Assembly: GCF_006345805.1 (NCBI RefSeq)
Contig: NW_021827659.1
Span: forward strand, 1 to 9,992
Direction of reading: 5' to 3'
DNA from: Octopus sinensis
Lineage: Eukaryota
DNA: 9,992 bases
A program made the position numbers and the translations under genes. Position 1 is the first letter of the stretch; every line of letters begins with the position of its first letter. The notes beneath the pieces are model-generated. The model was not told where the DNA came from and did not search any database. It worked only from the letters and a program-made list of their open reading frames with translations. Below, piece by piece: positions 2,293 through 9,992 of the stretch.

Positions 2293-2409
2293 GGTGGACA
2301 GTGAACGGCGTTAGGATGGTATAAAGATTAAAGTTGTAGTGAACTGACATGGGGGACTGGAAGCCCTCTGAATATTGGAGAAGAGTAACCTATATCATTT
2401 ACGATTAAA

Positions 2410-2641
2410 GGCGGCGAGCTGGCAGAAGCGTTAGCACGCCGGGCGAAATGCTTAGCGGTATTTCGTCTGCGTTACGTTGTGAGTTCAAATTCCGCCGAGG
2501 TCGACTTTGCCTTTCATCCTTTCGGGGTCGATAAATTAAGTACCAGTTACGCACTGGGGTCGATGTAATCGACTTAATACCTATGTCTGTCCTTGTTTGT
2601 CCCCTCTGTGTTTAGCCCCTTGTGGGTAATAAAGAAATAGG
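2410..2641 (+). mobile_element. tRNA-derived SINE (family B), near full length
   Basis: A-box-like tggcagaagcgttag and B-box gagttcaaattcc (2481-2493). The central gaggtcgactttgcctttcatcctttcggggtcgataaattaagtaccag is followed by hairpin gtcgat-gta-atcgac. A second copy at 7836-8055 confirms it is repetitive. Confidence 0.9.
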
Positions 2642-3491: not shown

Positions 3492-3599
3492 TGGTAAATT
3501 TATAATACAAGAAAGTGAAATGATCAGGCTTTAATCCAAATCACAACAATCGTTTCTGTGCATGAGCAACACCTGTTAGTTACTGAGTGCTTCAGATAT

Positions 3600-3807
3600 A
3601 CGTATTATTTTACAAATATTACGTATTGGAGCAATCTCAAGAATAATCAGCCGAAATTGTGAGGATAATCTGGTTCTTGACTGAAGATAGAAAACTTCGA
3701 ATGACCCGTCCTTGTTTTCTTTGTATCGTCTATCTGGATTGTTTGTCGTCCCTTTTTGTATCACCTAGTTGTCCGGATGTTTTGCGTTCTTGTCCTATTT
3801 TGTATTT
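3600..3807 (+). repeat. Unclassified interspersed-repeat end with T-rich tail running into (TA)n
   Basis: The T-rich segment ends ..cttgtcctattttgtattt, directly followed by (TA)n. It resembles a repeat I recall from octopus sequence. There is no second copy in the window, so this is inference. Confidence 0.35.
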
Positions 3808-3854
3808 TATATATATATATATATATTATATATATATATAATATATATATATAT

Positions 3855-3890
<36 letters not shown>
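3808..3890. repeat. Interrupted (TA)n microsatellite
   Basis: Seen directly. Confidence 0.95.
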
Positions 3891-3892
3891 TC

Positions 3893-3947
3893 TAAATTTT
3901 CTAAAATCTTCCAGCCATGGTTTTTTTTTTTATCTCATTCTGAAAAG

Positions 3948-4001
<54 letters not shown>

Positions 4002-4055
4002 CTTTTCAGAATGAGATAATAAAAAAAACATGGCTGTGAGATTTTAAAAAATTTA
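3893..4055. repeat. Palindrome: ~60-bp inverted arms around (AT)22
   Basis: Arms 3893-3952 and 3997-4055 are reverse complements. The core 3930-4019 is a perfect 90-bp palindrome (23-bp arms plus self-complementary (AT)22). Confidence 0.95.
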
Positions 4056-4062
4056 TAAATAG

Positions 4063-4109
4063 GTCTTACAGCTGTTTCCAGGATTTTATTATATCCCTTC
4101 ATCAGAGAC
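4063..4109 (-). ncRNA. Minimal type I hammerhead ribozyme motif
   Basis: Minus strand: GUCU-CUGAUGA-AGGGAUAUAAUAAAAUCCUG-GAAA-CAGCUG-UA/AGAC. It has the complete catalytic core, stem I GUCU/AGAC, palindromic stem III and a GUA triplet. Predicted cleavage is between 4067 and 4066. Activity is untested. Confidence 0.7.
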
Positions 4110-4491
4110 GGTGTGAGAAAATGGTTAAGCAATAGTTATTCCAGATATGATACGAAATAGAGAGTGAAGTGGAGGAATGAAAATAGATGTGAGATATGCA
4201 TGGATATTGCATTTGTAGATCCTTTATTTAAACAAAATGGTATACATATAAGATTTTAATATCCTGTGAGTAAAATCCAATAGTATCTAAAATTGGTTAT
4301 TCCAAGTATAGAGTTTGTACACGGTGCTATTGAATCAAGTGTTTTATTTGATTTATTTAATTATTCTGCTTAAATAATGGATCTACAAATGCAATATCCC
4401 AGCATATCTCACATCTATTTTCATTCTTCCACTTCATTCTCTATTTCGTATCTTATCTTAATTAACTATTGCTTAACCATTTTCTCGCGCC

Positions 4492-4539
4492 GTCTCTGAT
4501 GAAGGGATATAATAAATATCCTGGAAACAGCTGTAAGAC
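4492..4539 (+). ncRNA. Minimal type I hammerhead ribozyme motif
   Basis: GUCU(4492-4495)-CUGAUGA(4496-4502)-stem II(4503-4523: 7 bp below a terminal A-G mismatch, AAUAA loop)-GAAA(4524-4527)-CAGCUG-UA/AGAC. Predicted cleavage is after 4535. Activity is untested. Confidence 0.75.
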
Positions 4540-4577
4540 CTTCTATTTATAAACGTCATATAAAGGCAAGATGTACC

Positions 4578-4623
4578 ACCGTTCGATGATGGCTGTAGCT
4601 AGTCGAAACTTCGAAGTCGCTGT
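4578..4623 (+). ncRNA. Variant/decayed hammerhead-like motif
   Basis: ACCGU-UCGAUGA-U-GGCU(GUAGCU)AGUC-GAAA-CUUCGAAG-UC/GCUGU. It has an 8-bp palindromic stem III and a GUC triplet, but the core starts UC instead of CU and stem I has a mismatch. Confidence 0.4.
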
Positions 4624-4726
4624 CAATATTATTCTTAAAGAATATCAAGTTTGTACTATACCAAAAGTATTTAGTAAGCCTTCTGTTTAATATTAGATTG
4701 TTTATATTATAAGATAAAAAGCATAG

Positions 4727-4953
4727 ATATATATATATATATACATGCATACATATCTATATACGATGATATATAGACATATATGTATGCATATATTTAT
4801 GCGTCTGCATGGATATGTAAATGTCAACTCAATATGTATATTAGCACACACACACACACACGCCACACACACACACACACAACACACACACCACACACAC
4901 ACATATATTATATATATATATATTATATATATATATAAATATATATATACACA
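4727..4953. repeat. Compound (TA)n/(CA)n microsatellite
   Basis: Seen directly. Confidence 0.9.
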
Positions 4954-5099
4954 CATCCACGTATGAGTGTGTACATAGCGTTTCTGTGAATCTAAAAGCA
5001 AAGGTCACATAGTTTTAGAAAGGCAGACTGTGTTAAATAGCAGCTGTAGGTTAAAGGGGAGATACCTTCAACACAGACCTCCCGCCATTAACACTTGTC

Positions 5100-5790
5100 T
5101 GGGGGGAGGCGGAGAAGATGGAGGCGAGATGGGGGAGGTGACGGAGAGGAAGTAGGGGCGTTGACAGAAGGGGTGAGGGTGGAGATGAAAGAATGGGAGA
5201 GGGGGGAAATGTGAGGGGAATGAAAAAAAGGGAGAGAGGTGTGGTGAGAAAAGGAGACAGGGCAGTGGCGGGAGAAGGAGCGACGGTGGGGGGTGACAGA
5301 AGAGAAGACGGGGATTGAAAGAAGTTGAGAGGGGAGGTGAGAGGTGAGAGAGGGTGGAGGTGGGAATTGGAGGGGAGGTTAGAGGAGAGGGGGAGGGGAC
5401 AGAAGGAGATTGGGGAGGTGACAGAAGAGAAGAGGGGATTGAAAGAAGTTGAGAGGGGAGGTGAGAGGTGAGAGGGGGAATGAGAGGAGAGAGGGTAGAG
5501 GTGGGAATTGGAGGGGAGAGGTTAGAGGTGAGGGGGAGGGGACAGAAGGAGATTGGGGAGGTGACAGAAGAGAAGAGGGGATTGAAAGAAGTTGAGAGGG
5601 GAGGTGAGAGGTGAGAGGGGGAATGAGAGGAGAGAGGGTAGAGGTGGGAATTGGAGGGGAGAGGTTAGAGGTGAGGGGGAGGGGACAGAAGGAGATTGGG
5701 GAGGTGACAGAAGGGATGAGGGTGAGGGAATCAAGAGAGGGGAGAAGGGAGGTGAGGGGAGAGAAGGGGCAGTGAGAAAAAAAAGAGAAG
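5100..5790 (+). repeat. G/A-rich polypurine tract
   Basis: The + strand is overwhelmingly G and A, with many G3-G6 runs. Confidence 0.9.
5295..5713 (+). repeat. 143-bp tandem repeat (two identical units plus a diverged 125-bp unit)
   Basis: Units start gacagaag at 5295, 5420, 5563 and 5706. 5420-5562 and 5563-5705 are identical when read base by base. Confidence 0.92.
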
Positions 5791-5804: not shown

Positions 5805-6385
5805 CACCATCTCAGTTACACTATTACAACCACTACTACCGCCATCCCACCACCACCACCACCACCATTGCCACCGTGACCATTCTCCCCCAATGTCAGT
5901 ATTACCGTAACTATCACCTCCACTACCGAACACCGGCACCCTCACCACCATTGTCAACACATGGTCCACCTTTCCCCACACCATCACCATGCCACTAATA
6001 TTGCCACCACCACCACCACCACCACCACCACTATCAGCCTCACTCTCGCAACTACCCCCTCTACTTCCACCACCATTATCAACTACTGCAGCCATCAACA
6101 CTAACACACCACCACCATTACTACCGCCTTCACTACTACTACGACTACTACTACAAATACCATTACTCAATAAAAGCTTCAATACTATTTCTACTACTAC
6201 CACTACCACCACCACCACTACCAGCAACACAACCACTACTACTACCATCACCATCACTACTACTACTAATACTAATACTACTACTACTACAACCACCATT
6301 ACCACTACTACTTCTACTACTACAATCACCACCACCACCACCATTTTAACTATCATTGTCACTCTCACCTCCACCACCACCATAA
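5805..6385. repeat. Imperfect (CAC)n/(ACT)n trinucleotide tract
   Basis: Long runs of cac/acc/act triplets. Confidence 0.9.
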
Positions 6386-6389
6386 CAGA

Positions 6390-6570
6390 AAAGCCAATCA
6401 ATGAGGGAGTCGCTTACTTGGCCACTCGACCCTGCTAGAAATATCAGCCAAATCTCCCCTCAAATCCTGCGACTAAGCAACAACGACACCGACTGAAACA
6501 CCTGAGTCATGCTGAGCCGTAGGACGGCTGGATCAGGGCTGGCCTGGGGTTTTATAGCAGCTAACATGTT
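6390..6570 (+). repeat. Possible remnant of another interspersed repeat between trinucleotide tracts
   Basis: This is a complex-sequence island. ggccactcgaccctgctagaaatatcagccaaatctcccctcaaatc resembles a repeat I recall from octopus; no internal confirmation. Confidence 0.3.
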
Positions 6571-6579
6571 TTTATCCCC

Positions 6580-6734
6580 CGCCGCCGCCGCCGCTAGAAT
6601 CACCATTACAACTATTACGACCTCCCCTACTACCATCACTACTACCACTGCCGCCACCAACACTACAACAACCATCAGCACAACAACAACAACAACAACA
6701 ACAACAACTACTACTACTTCTACTACTACTACTT

Positions 6735-6779
<45 letters not shown>

Positions 6780-7045
6780 ACTTCTTCTTCTTCTACTACT
6801 ACTACTACTACTACTACTACTATGCTGCTACTACCGACAACAACACCACCACAATCACCGCGAATACTGTCACCATCACCCCCTACCATTACCTCCGCCA
6901 CCATTATCCCTATTATCTTCAGTATCAACAGCACCATCGCCACAACCACCACCACCACCATCACCACCACTACTATTACTCTCAGCCTCATCTCTATCCC
7001 CCATCCATACCACCATCACCACCACCACTACCATTCCTACAACCA
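6580..7045. repeat. Compound trinucleotide microsatellite (GCC)/(ACC)/(ACA)/(ACT)/(TCT)/(CAC)
   Basis: Successive pure runs, e.g. (ACA)n from about 6680, (ACT)n at about 6708-6778, (TCT)n at about 6781-6793, then (ACT)n again. Confidence 0.95.
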
Positions 7046-7752: not shown

Positions 7753-7835
7753 CATGTAAACGCACATCGAGATAGAGCCATGGTAATCCAATAAAGCAAA
7801 CACACGCACTGTTGTATTCAGCTTCATTTCAATTA

Positions 7836-8055
7836 GGTGACAAGCTGGCAAGATCGTTAGCAACTCGGACAAAATGCTTAGCGGCATTTCGTCCGTCTTT
7901 ACCTGTCGAGTTCAAATTCTGCTGAGGTCGATTTTGCCTTTTATCTTTTCGGGGTCGATAAAATAAGTGCCAATTGAGCACTAGAGTCGATGTAATCGAT
8001 TTCCCCGTCCCGCCAAATTTGCTGACCTTGTGTCAAAATTTGAAACCAGTATTAT
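7836..8055 (+). mobile_element. tRNA-derived SINE (family B head/body, different 3' tail)
   Basis: It aligns with 2410-2572 (gctggca..gttagca..aaatgcttagcgg..gagttcaaatt..gaggtcga..ggggtcgataaa..gtcgatgtaatcga), then has an unrelated tail ending ..aaaatttgaaacc. Confidence 0.88.
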
Positions 8056-8220: not shown

Positions 8221-8660
8221 GGTACAGGACATCAAAAAAATGTTGAACACAATGAGAAACGAAAACATAAAAACAAAAACCTTGACACGAATTTTTTTTC
8301 GAACAACGAAAACAAAACCCAGAGAAATGAGACAGACAACATGAATATTCCCCTTCTTCAGTTGTCCCTGTTTCAACTACTCCACGTCATGAAGGCAAGG
8401 ACAAGACGCGACTTCATTGAAACAGTCCTTCCCGCAAAGCAAATTAAATAAAATTTGAGATTCTCTGCGTAGGGTGAAAGTGGTAAGAACATGACAGTGA
8501 GAACAAAACAGTAAAAACAAATGGTGAGGACTGTTAAGCCAAGACGATAGAAGAATTATTATGAACGCTTAGGAAGACGAGCTTATGAAGGAAACAGTAT
8601 GAGCACGTTTAGTCTTTACGAAGGTTGAGGGTAGAAAGGTAGATTCTCTTTCGTCACGTG
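8218..8660 (-). repeat. Unclassified interspersed-repeat end abutting (TA)n
   Basis: The minus strand is T-rich and ends ..gatgtcctgtacccac immediately before (AT)n. It resembles a repeat recalled from octopus sequence; class unknown. Confidence 0.35.
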
Positions 8661-8661
8661 T

Positions 8662-9992
8662 CAGCTCCCAGTCAAACTGAAAGAGGGGGTAATATGCCCT
8701 ATCCATAAGGGAGGTAGCAGAGCAGATGCTAAAAATTATAGGCCTATCTCTCTGACCTCACACATCAGCAAAGTCATGGAACGAATAGTCCGTAAGAAAC
8801 TAATCATGTTCCTTGAAGAAAATGACTTACTGTCTGACACCCAGCATGGATTTCGACCAGGTAGAGGCTGCCTAACACAGCTCCTGCAACACTATGACTG
8901 GGTGTTGAAACAGCTACTAAATGGCTCAAATGTGGATGTAATATATCTTGACTTTGCAAAAGCCTTTGATAAAGTCGACCATGGTATGATCTGTCAACAC
9001 TGCGTGGTCTCGGCATAGGCGGGAAACTTGGAGAGTGGCTGCACAACTTCCTAAAAGACAGAAAACAGGCAGTTGTGAGCAATGGAGCCACCTCAGGAAA
9101 CGCAAATAGCAAGCGGTGTCCCACAGGGCACTGTCTTGGGGCCACTGATGTTCATAGTGGCCCTTTCAGACATGCCTTCAGTTGCTACGATGACCACCCT
9201 TGCTAGCTATGCAGATGACACAAAAGTCTCCCACGCAATACAAAACCCTGAAATATTGCGCATCTGCAACATGAGCTGGACACAATATCAGGTGGGCTGA
9301 GGACAAACAACATGCAGTTTTAATGCAGGTAAGTTCCAGGCCCTGCGCTACTGGCACACAAAGGTAAATGACGTGAAGACTGGATACACTGGCCCAGGAA
9401 GAATTGCAATCCCTGAGTCAAAATCAGTGCGTGACCTGGGCATTGACATGAGCAATGATGCATCTTTCTAAATGCTATTTGCTAATCTGGTGATAAAATG
9501 CAGACGGCTAGCTGGATGGATTCTCCGAACTTTCAGAACAAGAGAGAAGGAGACACTGATGGTCCTATGGAAAACATTTGTCCTCAGCCGCTTGGACCAC
9601 TGCTCCCACTTTGGTCACCACACAATAAAACAAACAGCAGAACTCGAAGCAACTCAGAGAAGCTACACAAAGAAAATCGTCTCAATGCAAAATGTCAGCT
9701 ACTGGGAAAGACTGAGGTATTAAACCTCTTCTCCCTGGAGCGGAGGCGGGAAGATATGCAGTGATATACATCTGGAAAATCCTGGAGGTTCTGTCCCAAA
9801 CTTTGGCATTCAAAGTTACTCTCCACCGCAGAACGGGGCGCCGCTGCGTGGTGCCAAGGATTCCAACATCACCATCAAAATACAGGTCCAATACTGCAAA
9901 CAGCTTGGGTTTCAGAGGACCACGGCTCTTTACCATCCTCCCTAAATGCCTGAGAGACTTACATGGTGTGGATGTGGGTTTTCTTTAAAACT
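8662..9992 (+). mobile_element. 5'-truncated, frameshifted CR1-group LINE ORF2 (reverse transcriptase and C-terminal region), running off the window end
   Basis: RT motifs: KNYRPISLTS (8731-8760), QHGFRPGR, YLDFAKAFDKVDH (LDFAKAFD 8947-8970), SGVPQGTVLGP (GVPQG 9115-9129), YADD (9208-9219), VRDLGI, then LxLFSLERRR and RGPRLFxxLP, which are typical of CR1-like elements. There are multiple frameshifts and an in-frame TAA at 9469. Confidence 0.93.

What the first reader, a model, noticed from the sequence alone, without database searches (positions are those of the whole stretch)
4052..4553. Two outward-facing hammerhead ribozymes capping an inverted-repeat element
Both arms of a ~190-bp inverted repeat carry a complete hammerhead core: GUCU-CUGAUGA-stem II-GAAA-CAGCUG-UA/AGAC, on - at 4063-4109 and on + at 4492-4539. 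Stem III is a single C-G pair extended by the palindrome CAGCUG, the hallmark of minimal type I hammerheads of Penelope-like elements and retrozymes that cleave as dimers (established). The core bases are identical in both arms, while about a dozen differences lie elsewhere. Both copies have an unusual A-G apposition at the 10.1/11.1 position of stem II, which may be a family-specific variant. Inference: this is an unannotated ribozyme-bearing cephalopod PLE or non-autonomous retrozyme-like family, able to cut transcripts on either strand.
Basis: partly seen in the sequence, partly recalled or inferred. Interest (0 to 1): 0.85.

Follow-up and report, generated by a model that had tools for sequence, protein, structure and literature searches.

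The report
Inverted Penelope-type hammerhead repeat pair
A 502-bp inverted repeat carries a minimal hammerhead ribozyme motif at each outer end; this looks like two truncated Penelope-like retrotransposon ends inserted back to back, a known pattern, and the ribozymes are probably relics at this locus.

Summary
Window 4052-4553 is an inverted repeat with 187/191-nt arms (13 substitutions, two indels) and a unique 124-nt centre. Each arm ends in a complete type I hammerhead core with 4-bp helix I, 5-7-bp helix II and the palindrome ACAGCUGU as helix III. A motif this good is expected about 2e-6 times per 10-kb window.

It matches the published 'minimal' hammerheads of Penelope-like elements (PLEs): short helix I, long helix II, an extra base after A9 and a palindromic helix III. 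The head-to-head layout, with ribozyme-bearing 3' ends outward in AT-rich DNA beside (TA)23, matches the documented PLE insertion pattern of inverted 5'-truncated copies.

It is not a retrozyme, because there is no tandem repeat. Rfam does not detect it.

Cutting transcripts on either strand is unlikely here. Each transcript carries one sense copy, whereas these ribozymes need two, and a read-through RNA folds into a -303 kcal/mol hairpin that buries the motif.

No relatives could be retrieved, so copy number, covariation, linkage to a PLE gene and cleavage remain untested. Verdict: a new member of a known kind, of low to moderate interest.

The parts
4052..4553 (.). Whole inverted-repeat element: two head-to-head copies of one unit, with the 3' ends facing outward.
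   Evidence: The RNA of the whole stretch folds into one long hairpin, -302.9 kcal/mol, z = -31.6.
4052..4238 (-). Left arm: the unit copy read on the - strand, 187 nt, ending in the hammerhead.
   Evidence: Alignment A1; difference list.
4363..4553 (+). Right arm: the unit copy read on the + strand, 191 nt, ending in the hammerhead.
4239..4362 (.). Unique 124-nt centre. It is either the further 5' part of one of the two copies or filler; which arm it belongs to is unknown.
   Evidence: Local alignment scores against the arms and against its own reverse complement are at the level of shuffled controls.
4492..4539 (+). Right minimal type I hammerhead motif. Helix I is 4492-4495 with 4536-4539. 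The core CUGAUGA is 4496-4502, followed by the extra A4503. Helix II is 4504-4510 with 4516-4522 (7 bp, first pair G-U), followed by the extra G4523. G12-A14 is 4524-4526. The predicted cut is after A4535.
   Evidence: Sequence, pattern search, descriptor, fold.
4063..4109 (-). Left minimal type I hammerhead motif. It is the same as the right one except for a 1-nt deletion that leaves a 5-bp helix II and an 8-nt loop. The predicted cut on the - strand is between 4067 and 4066.
4527..4534 (+). ACAGCUGU: A15.1 to U16.1, a self-complementary octamer that can form helix III between two ribozyme copies. Its mirror in the left copy is 4068-4075.
   Evidence: The lowest-energy dimer of two copies contains this 8-bp intermolecular helix and is 5.3-6.1 kcal/mol more stable than two monomers.
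4052..4059 (.). Terminal TTTATAAA, repeated at 4546-4553. The octamer is its own reverse complement, so it can be read either as the last 8 bp of the inverted repeat or as an 8-bp target-site duplication.
   Evidence: Sequence, alignment.
4546..4553 (.). Second copy of the terminal TTTATAAA.
   Evidence: Sequence.

Best explanation
The element is the footprint of a Penelope-like retroelement (PLE) insertion: two heavily 5'-truncated copies of the 3' terminal (pseudo-LTR) region of one PLE family, joined head to head. Each outer end therefore carries the minimal hammerhead that PLEs hold in that region.

Inferred mechanism. The PLE enzyme cut both strands of AT-rich target DNA next to a (TA)n tract. 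Reverse transcription was primed on both 3' ends. Both cDNAs copied only the last 190-310 nt of the RNA, and they met in the middle.

Role of the ribozyme. In the parent element, tandem sense copies can pair through the ACAGCUGU palindrome and cleave as a double hammerhead. At this locus the two copies lie on opposite strands, so no single transcript has two sense copies, and a read-through RNA is a long hairpin. The motifs here are most likely inactive relics.

Shown: the inverted repeat, the complete core, the helix dimensions, the palindrome, the predicted dimer and hairpin folds, and the AT-rich/(TA)n setting. Inferred: PLE origin, the dual-priming event, and inactivity.
For: 1. Complete hammerhead core with three helices at both ends, far above chance.
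2. The architecture matches the published PLE min-HHR description: helix I 4-5 bp, helix II 6-8 bp, an extra nucleotide between A9 and 10.1, and a palindromic 15.2-16.2/loop 3. The same paper reports dual min-HHRs 100-700 bp apart on opposite strands (PMC4209133). Here helix I is 4 bp, helix II is 7 and 5 bp, the extra base is A4503, the palindrome is ACAGCUGU, and the two motifs lie about 430 bp apart on opposite strands.
3. PLE insertions are highly 5'-truncated and often carry an inverted 5'-truncated copy that forms inverted repeats. They have short tails and a microsatellite bias, with (TA)n shown as a preferred target (PMC8557442). A purified PLE protein cleaves and extends both DNA strands and prefers AT-rich DNA (PMC11167929).
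4. The element sits in DNA of 25-30% GC, about 54 nt from a (TA)23 tract.
5. In the anole PLE the hammerhead lies at the pLTR/ORF junction (PMC11167929). By inference, that puts it near the 3' end of an insertion, as seen here.
6. Two copies are predicted to form the intermolecular helix III and helix I of a double hammerhead.
7. Penelope elements are abundant in octopus and squid genomes (PMC13282606, PMC8967140).
8. Two of the 13 arm differences are CG versus CA at 4487 and 4489, which fits ordinary decay of an old insertion.
Against: - No PLE reverse transcriptase or GIY-YIG gene is in the window. The only RT (8635-9992) is non-LTR-like, and none of its 120 listed homologues carries a GIY-YIG domain.
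- No related copy could be found in any searchable collection, so linkage to a PLE, family consensus and covariation are all untested.
- The G10.1-C11.1 pair, described as highly conserved in PLE min-HHRs, is G-U here, and an extra G precedes G12.
- Rfam gives no hammerhead match even at E <= 10. Canonical hammerheads with the same GAAACAGCUGUA scored 25-35 bits in the same kind of search.
- The sequence beyond the cut site is only 7-18 nt, against the 30-40 bp tail described for PLEs.
- No unambiguous target-site duplication is present.
Confidence: 0.7

Rival explanations
1. The 502-bp palindromic unit is itself a mobile, non-autonomous element. It would be either a PLE-derived 'inverted pLTR' element copied as a whole, or a MITE/foldback-type DNA transposon whose long terminal inverted repeats derive from a PLE end.
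For: Long, well-matched arms that end in an octamer readable as an 8-bp target-site duplication (TTTATAAA at 4052-4059 and 4546-4553). A second, unrelated foldback lies immediately to the left at 3916-4034. Animal retrozymes are reported to derive from pLTRs, so non-autonomous PLE derivatives do exist (bioRxiv 10.64898/2026.07.22.740005).
Against: The octamer is its own reverse complement, so it is equally well just the end of the inverted repeat. No second copy of the unit exists in the window or in 0.8 Mb of fetched loci. Inverted 5'-truncated pairs are already an ordinary outcome of single PLE insertions (PMC8557442).
Confidence: 0.13
2. Two independent insertions of the same PLE family landed head to head, one beside or inside the other, rather than arising in one dual-primed event.
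For: PLEs tend to insert into or next to existing copies (PMC6765202). The arms differ by 7% and by two indels, which could reflect different source copies.
Against: The two arms are truncated to nearly the same length and abut a single short unique segment, which is simpler as one event. A 7% difference is also what ordinary decay after a single event would give.
Confidence: 0.1
3. It is a metazoan non-LTR retrozyme, whose RNA is cut by its hammerheads and circularised.
For: It has a type I hammerhead with a short palindromic helix III, a unit size in the range of retrozyme monomers, and low GC (PMC7229834).
Against: Retrozymes are tandem direct repeats carrying canonical hammerheads. Here the copies are inverted, no direct or tandem repeat of the unit exists, and the motif is the minimal PLE type that Rfam does not score.
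Confidence: 0.04
4. The hammerhead-like motif arose by chance in an unrelated inverted duplication.
For: The two copies are duplicates, so there is only one independent occurrence. Rfam does not detect it. About 0.6 motifs of this quality are expected by chance in a 3-Gb genome.
Against: The expectation is 2e-6 per window. Chance matches to the bare core found in viral and metagenome contigs lack helices I and II. The motif sits exactly at the outer ends of an inverted repeat and shows several features that were not part of the search pattern.
Confidence: 0.03

Closest known systems
Minimal type I hammerheads (min-HHRs) in the pseudo-LTRs of metazoan Penelope-like elements (Cervera and de la Pena 2014, PMC4209133)
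   Same: Full core, 4-bp helix I, long helix II, an extra nucleotide after A9, a palindromic helix III implying action as a dimer, and occurrence as pairs a few hundred bp apart on opposite strands.
   Different: G10.1-C11.1 is replaced by G-U, and an extra G lies between helix II and G12. No link to a PLE gene is shown here, and no family consensus is available.
PLE insertion architecture: 5'-truncated copies with an adjacent inverted 5'-truncated copy (Craig et al. 2021, PMC8557442); cleavage and extension of both strands by a purified PLE protein (PMC11167929)
   Same: Head-to-head inverted copies with the 3' ends outward, in an AT-rich/(TA)n setting, with a short stretch beyond the ribozyme.
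   Different: Both copies here are very short (about 190-310 nt) and there is no element body. The stretch beyond the cut site is 7-18 nt rather than 30-40 bp.
Metazoan non-LTR retrozymes (Cervera and de la Pena 2020, PMC7229834)
   Same: Type I hammerhead with a short palindromic helix III, small AT-rich units, and an evolutionary relationship to pLTRs (bioRxiv 10.64898/2026.07.22.740005).
   Different: Retrozymes are tandem direct repeats with canonical 6-bp helix I and 4-bp helix II. This element is an inverted pair carrying the minimal motif.
Canonical animal type I hammerheads (Rfam RF00163), including metagenome examples with the same GAAACAGCUGUA (loci L015, L039, L072, L099, L125, L126)
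   Same: Identical core and an identical helix III/cleavage triplet, GAAAC-AGCU-GUA.
   Different: Those score 25-35 bits against RF00163, while the window motif gives no match at E <= 10. They have G10.1 directly after CUGAUGA, a 4-bp helix II and a 6-7-bp helix I.
Axolotl HHR_Amex2, with a U-U mismatch at the base of helix II (PMC7229834)
   Same: A natural animal hammerhead family that has a non-Watson-Crick apposition at the base of helix II.
   Different: The mismatch is different (U-U rather than A/G followed by G-U), and it belongs to a canonical retrozyme hammerhead.

Membership tests
Hammerhead ribozyme, type I | Conserved core C3-U4-G5-A6-N7-G8-A9, G12-A13-A14, A15.1-U16.1, and H17 at the cut site | tested here: met
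   CUGAUGA at 4496-4502, GAA at 4524-4526, A4527 paired with U4534, and A4535. The - strand copy is identical.
Hammerhead ribozyme, type I | Three helices around the core, with helix I open and helices II and III closed | tested here: met
   Helix I is 4 bp; helix II is 7 bp (right) or 5 bp (left); helix III is A-U plus C-G with loop AGCU.
Hammerhead ribozyme, type I | G10.1-C11.1 pair closing helix II next to the core | tested here: not met
   A4503 faces G4523. The first real pair is G4504-U4522. Both copies are the same.
Hammerhead ribozyme, type I | Score at or above the Rfam RF00163 gathering threshold | tested here: not met
   No match at the gathering threshold or at E <= 10. Control hammerheads with the same helix III scored 25-35 bits, against a threshold of 34.
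Hammerhead ribozyme, type I | Covariation in the helices across family members | not testable with these tools
   Only two copies are available, differing by one indel within the motif. No relatives were found.
Hammerhead ribozyme, type I | Site-specific self-cleavage after H17 | not testable with these tools
   This needs in vitro transcription or RNA end mapping.
PLE minimal hammerhead (min-HHR) | Short helix I (4-5 bp) and long helix II (6-8 bp) | tested here: met
   Helix I is 4 bp. Helix II is 7 bp in the right copy and 5 bp in the left copy after a 1-nt deletion. The criteria come from PMC4209133.
PLE minimal hammerhead (min-HHR) | [quoted passage not shown] | tested here: met
   A4503 on the + strand, and the base opposite T4098 on the - strand. 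The criterion comes from PMC4209133.
PLE minimal hammerhead (min-HHR) | Palindromic 15.2-16.2 and loop 3, allowing a double hammerhead | tested here: met
   ACAGCUGU at 4527-4534. The predicted dimer contains the 8-bp intermolecular helix.
PLE minimal hammerhead (min-HHR) | Location in the pseudo-LTR of an element that encodes RT plus a GIY-YIG endonuclease | tested here: inconclusive
   No such gene is in the 10-kb window. That is expected for 5'-truncated copies, and longer relatives could not be fetched.
PLE insertion structure | 5'-truncated copy with an adjacent inverted 5'-truncated copy, forming an inverted repeat | tested here: met
   Arms 4052-4238 and 4363-4553 lie head to head with the ribozyme-bearing ends outward. 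The criterion comes from PMC8557442.
PLE insertion structure | AT-rich or (TA)n target preference | tested here: met
   GC is 25-30% over 3501-5000. (TA)23 at 3952-3997 lies about 54 nt from the left end.
PLE insertion structure | A 30-40 bp tail at one end | tested here: inconclusive
   Only 7-18 nt follow the cut site, and the boundaries cannot be set without other copies.
Metazoan non-LTR retrozyme | Tandem direct repeats of a 150-450 bp unit | tested here: not met
   No direct or tandem repeat of the unit was found. The two copies are inverted.
Metazoan non-LTR retrozyme | Canonical type I hammerhead (about 6-bp helix I, 4-bp helix II) | tested here: not met
   Helix I is 4 bp and helix II is 7 bp. 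There is no RF00163 match.
MITE / foldback DNA transposon | Terminal inverted repeats flanked by a fixed-length target-site duplication | tested here: inconclusive
   TTTATAAA at both ends could be an 8-bp duplication, but the octamer is its own reverse complement.

The most novel reading that the evidence does not exclude
The 502-bp palindromic unit is not a one-off insertion scar. It would be a multi-copy, non-autonomous PLE derivative that moves as a whole. Its hammerhead would carry a family-wide, still active core variant in which an extra A after A9 and an extra G before G12 form an additional A-G pair stacked under helix II.
Probability: 0.08. Interest if true: 0.55.

Novelty: new member of a known kind. 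Interest (0 to 1): 0.25.

Why it matters
If the main reading is right, this is a routine repeat annotation: a Penelope-type insertion scar whose ribozyme motifs show where it came from. It also shows that standard Rfam scans miss the minimal hammerheads of these elements.

Two points deserve a small follow-up. The first is whether the extra G before G12 and the G-U closing pair are shared by the whole family, which would make them a tolerated core variant. The second is whether such long inverted pairs, once transcribed, act as hairpin sources of small RNAs rather than as ribozymes.

Tried and rejected
- Rfam at gathering thresholds and at E <= 10 gave no hammerhead match. Controls show that the model does recognise canonical hammerheads with the same helix III, so the miss reflects the minimal architecture, not the search.
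- The search for relatives found nothing. This covered: exact look-ups of four window ORFs; a family-specific pattern in viral, metagenome and prokaryote-genome collections; two conserved arm 21-25-mers; a six-frame translation of the arm against 5.8 billion proteins; BLASTN against 133 fetched loci, including 21 kb of Argonauta hians; and a literal sequence search of the literature.
- The generic pattern CTGATGA-N-GAAACAGCTGTA gave 10 viral hits, all chance matches without helices. It also gave 120 metagenome contigs, of which about 10 hold real-looking hammerheads. Seven or eight of those are canonical and none is of this family.
- Single-strand folding of the monomer is no better than shuffled sequence (z about -0.6). 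This is expected for minimal hammerheads and counts neither for nor against.
- I looked for a third partial copy or a palindrome in the centre and found none.
- I tried to identify the source organism through the neighbouring LINE RT and obtained only a 47% hit to an octopod.
- Lunse et al. 2017 on PLE hammerhead dimers is not held in the library.
- I rejected the retrozyme reading because there is no tandem repeat, and the chance reading on the statistics.

Full report
**What is in the sequence**

Window 4052-4553 is an inverted repeat. The arms are 4052-4238 and 4363-4553 and align over 191 columns with 13 substitutions, a 1-nt indel and a 3-nt indel. The 124 nt between them (4239-4362) show no similarity to the arms or to their own reverse complement beyond shuffled controls.

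Each arm ends, facing outward, in the same motif. On the + strand (4492-4539) it reads GUCU / CUGAUGA / A GGGAUAU AAUAA AUAUCCU G / GAAA / C AGCU G / U A, then AGAC. This gives every conserved hammerhead position:
- C3 to A9 at 4496-4502
- G12 to A14 at 4524-4526
- A15.1 (4527) paired with U16.1 (4534)
- H17 = A4535

Helix I is 4 bp, helix II is 7 bp, and helix III consists of A-U and C-G closed by AGCU. The - strand copy (4109-4063) is identical except for one missing U, which leaves a 5-bp helix II and an 8-nt loop. The only omission is that indel.

**Is it more than chance?**

- The bare pattern CTGATGA-N(8-38)-GAAAC occurs twice in the window against 0.03 expected.
- A fuller descriptor finds only these two sites, and gave one hit in 3000 dinucleotide shuffles of the window.
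- For helix I >=4 bp, helix II >=5 bp and a 6-nt palindrome, the analytic expectation is 2e-6 per window and about 0.6 per 3-Gb genome.
- Chance matches to the core plus GAAACAGCTGTA do exist in viral and metagenome contigs, but they lack helices I and II.

The two copies are duplicates, so this is one independent occurrence. No substitution falls in the 47 aligned ribozyme columns while 13 fall in the other 140. That is only weakly unusual (P = 0.02, post hoc), and an indel does lie in the motif.

**What kind of hammerhead is it?**

Rfam does not report it, either at gathering thresholds or at E <= 10 on a 601-nt slice. This is informative. Six metagenome contigs fetched with the same GAAACAGCUGUA carry canonical type I hammerheads. 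Five of them gave hammerhead matches of 25-35 bits in the same kind of search: four to RF00163 and one to RF02275. So the window motif departs from the canonical animal type.

Its departures are the ones published for the 'minimal' hammerheads of metazoan Penelope-like elements (PLEs): helix I of 4-5 bp, helix II of 6-8 bp, an unpaired nucleotide between A9 and 10.1, and palindromic 15.2-16.2/loop 3 (PMC4209133). ACAGCUGU (4527-4534) is its own reverse complement. Co-folding two copies predicts that 8-bp intermolecular helix together with an intermolecular helix I, 5.3-6.1 kcal/mol better than two monomers. That is the double-hammerhead topology.

One listed feature is not met. The G10.1-C11.1 pair, called highly conserved in that paper, is G4504-U4522 here, and an extra G4523 lies before G12.

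A4503 is the expected extra base. G4523 is described in none of the sources I could read. If position 4522 was once a C, it would have formed a CpG with G4523, and deamination would give the present U. A comparable natural C-to-U change is visible between two related metagenome copies, where C11.1 forms a CpG with G12 (L125 has ..GGGC GAAAC and L039 has ..GGGT GAAAC). That remains inference. A mismatch at the base of helix II has a natural precedent in an axolotl family (U-U, PMC7229834).

**What is the inverted repeat?**

The unit copies lie head to head with their ribozyme-bearing ends outward. PLE insertions are described as highly 5'-truncated and as often carrying an inverted 5'-truncated copy that creates inverted repeats. 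They have short tails and a microsatellite bias, with (TA)n shown as a preferred target (PMC8557442).

A purified PLE protein cleaves and extends both strands of AT-rich DNA, and in that element the hammerhead lies at the pLTR/ORF junction (PMC11167929). By inference, that places it near the 3' end of an insertion.

Dual min-HHRs 100-700 bp apart on opposite strands were already noted in Schistosoma (PMC4209133). Here the motifs are about 430 bp apart, the surrounding DNA is 25-30% GC, and a (TA)23 tract lies about 54 nt to the left.

The simplest reading is a single PLE-mediated insertion primed on both strands, with both cDNAs truncated after 190-310 nt. The terminal TTTATAAA at both ends is its own reverse complement, so it can be read either as the end of the repeat or as an 8-bp target duplication.

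The arms differ by 7%, including two CG/CA differences, which fits an old, decaying insertion. If the genome is an octopus and the published calibration applies (JC distance 0.09 is about 25 My, PMC13282606), a single event would be roughly 10 My old. This is a rough inference only.

**What does it do at this locus?**

Probably nothing as a ribozyme.
- These minimal motifs showed no detectable cleavage as monomers and only low cleavage as dimers in vitro (PMC4209133).
- A dimer needs two sense copies, and each strand's transcript here carries one sense and one antisense copy.
- A read-through RNA of 4052-4553 folds into a single hairpin of -302.9 kcal/mol (z = -31.6) in which every ribozyme base pairs with its antisense partner. 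The hammerhead fold is worth only -9 to -11 kcal/mol.
- Only a transcript that starts in the centre and runs outward, acting in trans with another family RNA, could form the active dimer.

The statement that the element can cut transcripts on either strand is therefore not supported.

**What it is not**

- It is not a metazoan retrozyme. Those are tandem direct repeats with canonical hammerheads (PMC7229834), and no direct or tandem copy of the unit exists here. Retrozymes are nevertheless reported to be pLTR derivatives (bioRxiv 10.64898/2026.07.22.740005).
- No PLE gene lies in the window. The only reverse transcriptase (8635-9992) matches RVT_1, has in-frame stops, and none of its 120 listed homologues carries a GIY-YIG domain. 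It is a separate non-LTR element about 4 kb away.

**Limits**

Every attempt to fetch relatives failed: exact ORF look-ups, pattern scans of viral, metagenome and prokaryote collections, a six-frame protein search, BLASTN against 0.8 Mb of fetched loci including 21 kb of Argonauta hians, and a literal literature search. The available collections do not hold the source genome.

Copy number, family consensus, covariation, linkage to an RT/GIY-YIG gene and cleavage are therefore untested. The 'cephalopod' label rests only on a 47% hit of the neighbouring LINE RT to an octopod protein. Penelope elements are known to be abundant in cephalopods, and canonical PLEs are reported to carry hammerheads universally. 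So even if everything is confirmed, this is a new member of a known kind.

**Verdict**

The best explanation, at confidence about 0.7, is an inverted pair of 5'-truncated PLE ends carrying minimal hammerheads. The ribozymes are probably inactive here. Interest is low to moderate (0.25). The one oddity worth a look is the G-U closing pair plus the extra G before G12.

Noticed in passing
window 3916-4034 (extends with mismatches to about 3902-4047): A near-perfect foldback: 55-nt arms, 98% complementary, centred on (TA)23, lying immediately left of the hammerhead element. It is unrelated in sequence to that element. It could be a MITE-like hairpin or a palindrome grown around the microsatellite.
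   Followed up: partly
window 8635-9992 (+): A decayed non-LTR (LINE-type) reverse transcriptase with several in-frame stops and a frame change near 9720-9760. It matches Pfam RVT_1 (72 bits). It has 3010 homologues; the best are 61-65% identical and unnamed, and the best named one is from Argonauta hians (47%). It runs off the window end.
   Followed up: partly
window 2395-2575 and 7824-8002: A dispersed repeat: two copies in the same orientation, 80% identical over 182 nt. No tRNA was detected, so its type is unknown, though a SINE-like element is possible.
   Followed up: partly
window 5103-5777 (core 5326-5722): A purine-rich minisatellite with a 143-bp unit, 2.8 copies at 95% identity, nested among shorter G/A-rich periodicities. 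It is followed at 6004-6970 by long (CCA)n, (ACT)n and (CAC)n tracts.
   Followed up: no
L125 1347-1391 (-) and L039 2354-2398 (-): Two metagenome contigs carry the same canonical type I hammerhead family. L125 has the G10.1-C11.1 pair while L039 has G-U at that position. This is a natural example of C11.1 decaying to U at the CpG it forms with G12.
   Followed up: partly
L049 2010-2047 (+): A metagenome contig (record name suggests groundwater) with CUGAUGA-U-GCUAU...AUAGC-U-GAAACAGCUGUA. It has one unpaired base on each side of helix II, the same layout as the window motif, and a 4-bp U/A helix I. It may be a real hammerhead or a lucky match.
   Followed up: no
L099 580-612 (+) and 1934-1965 (-): One metagenome contig holds a canonical type I hammerhead and, 1.3 kb away on the other strand and facing it, a minimal one with an extra U after A9 and the helix III palindrome CAUG. 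This is another case of paired opposite-strand hammerheads, but convergent rather than divergent.
   Followed up: no
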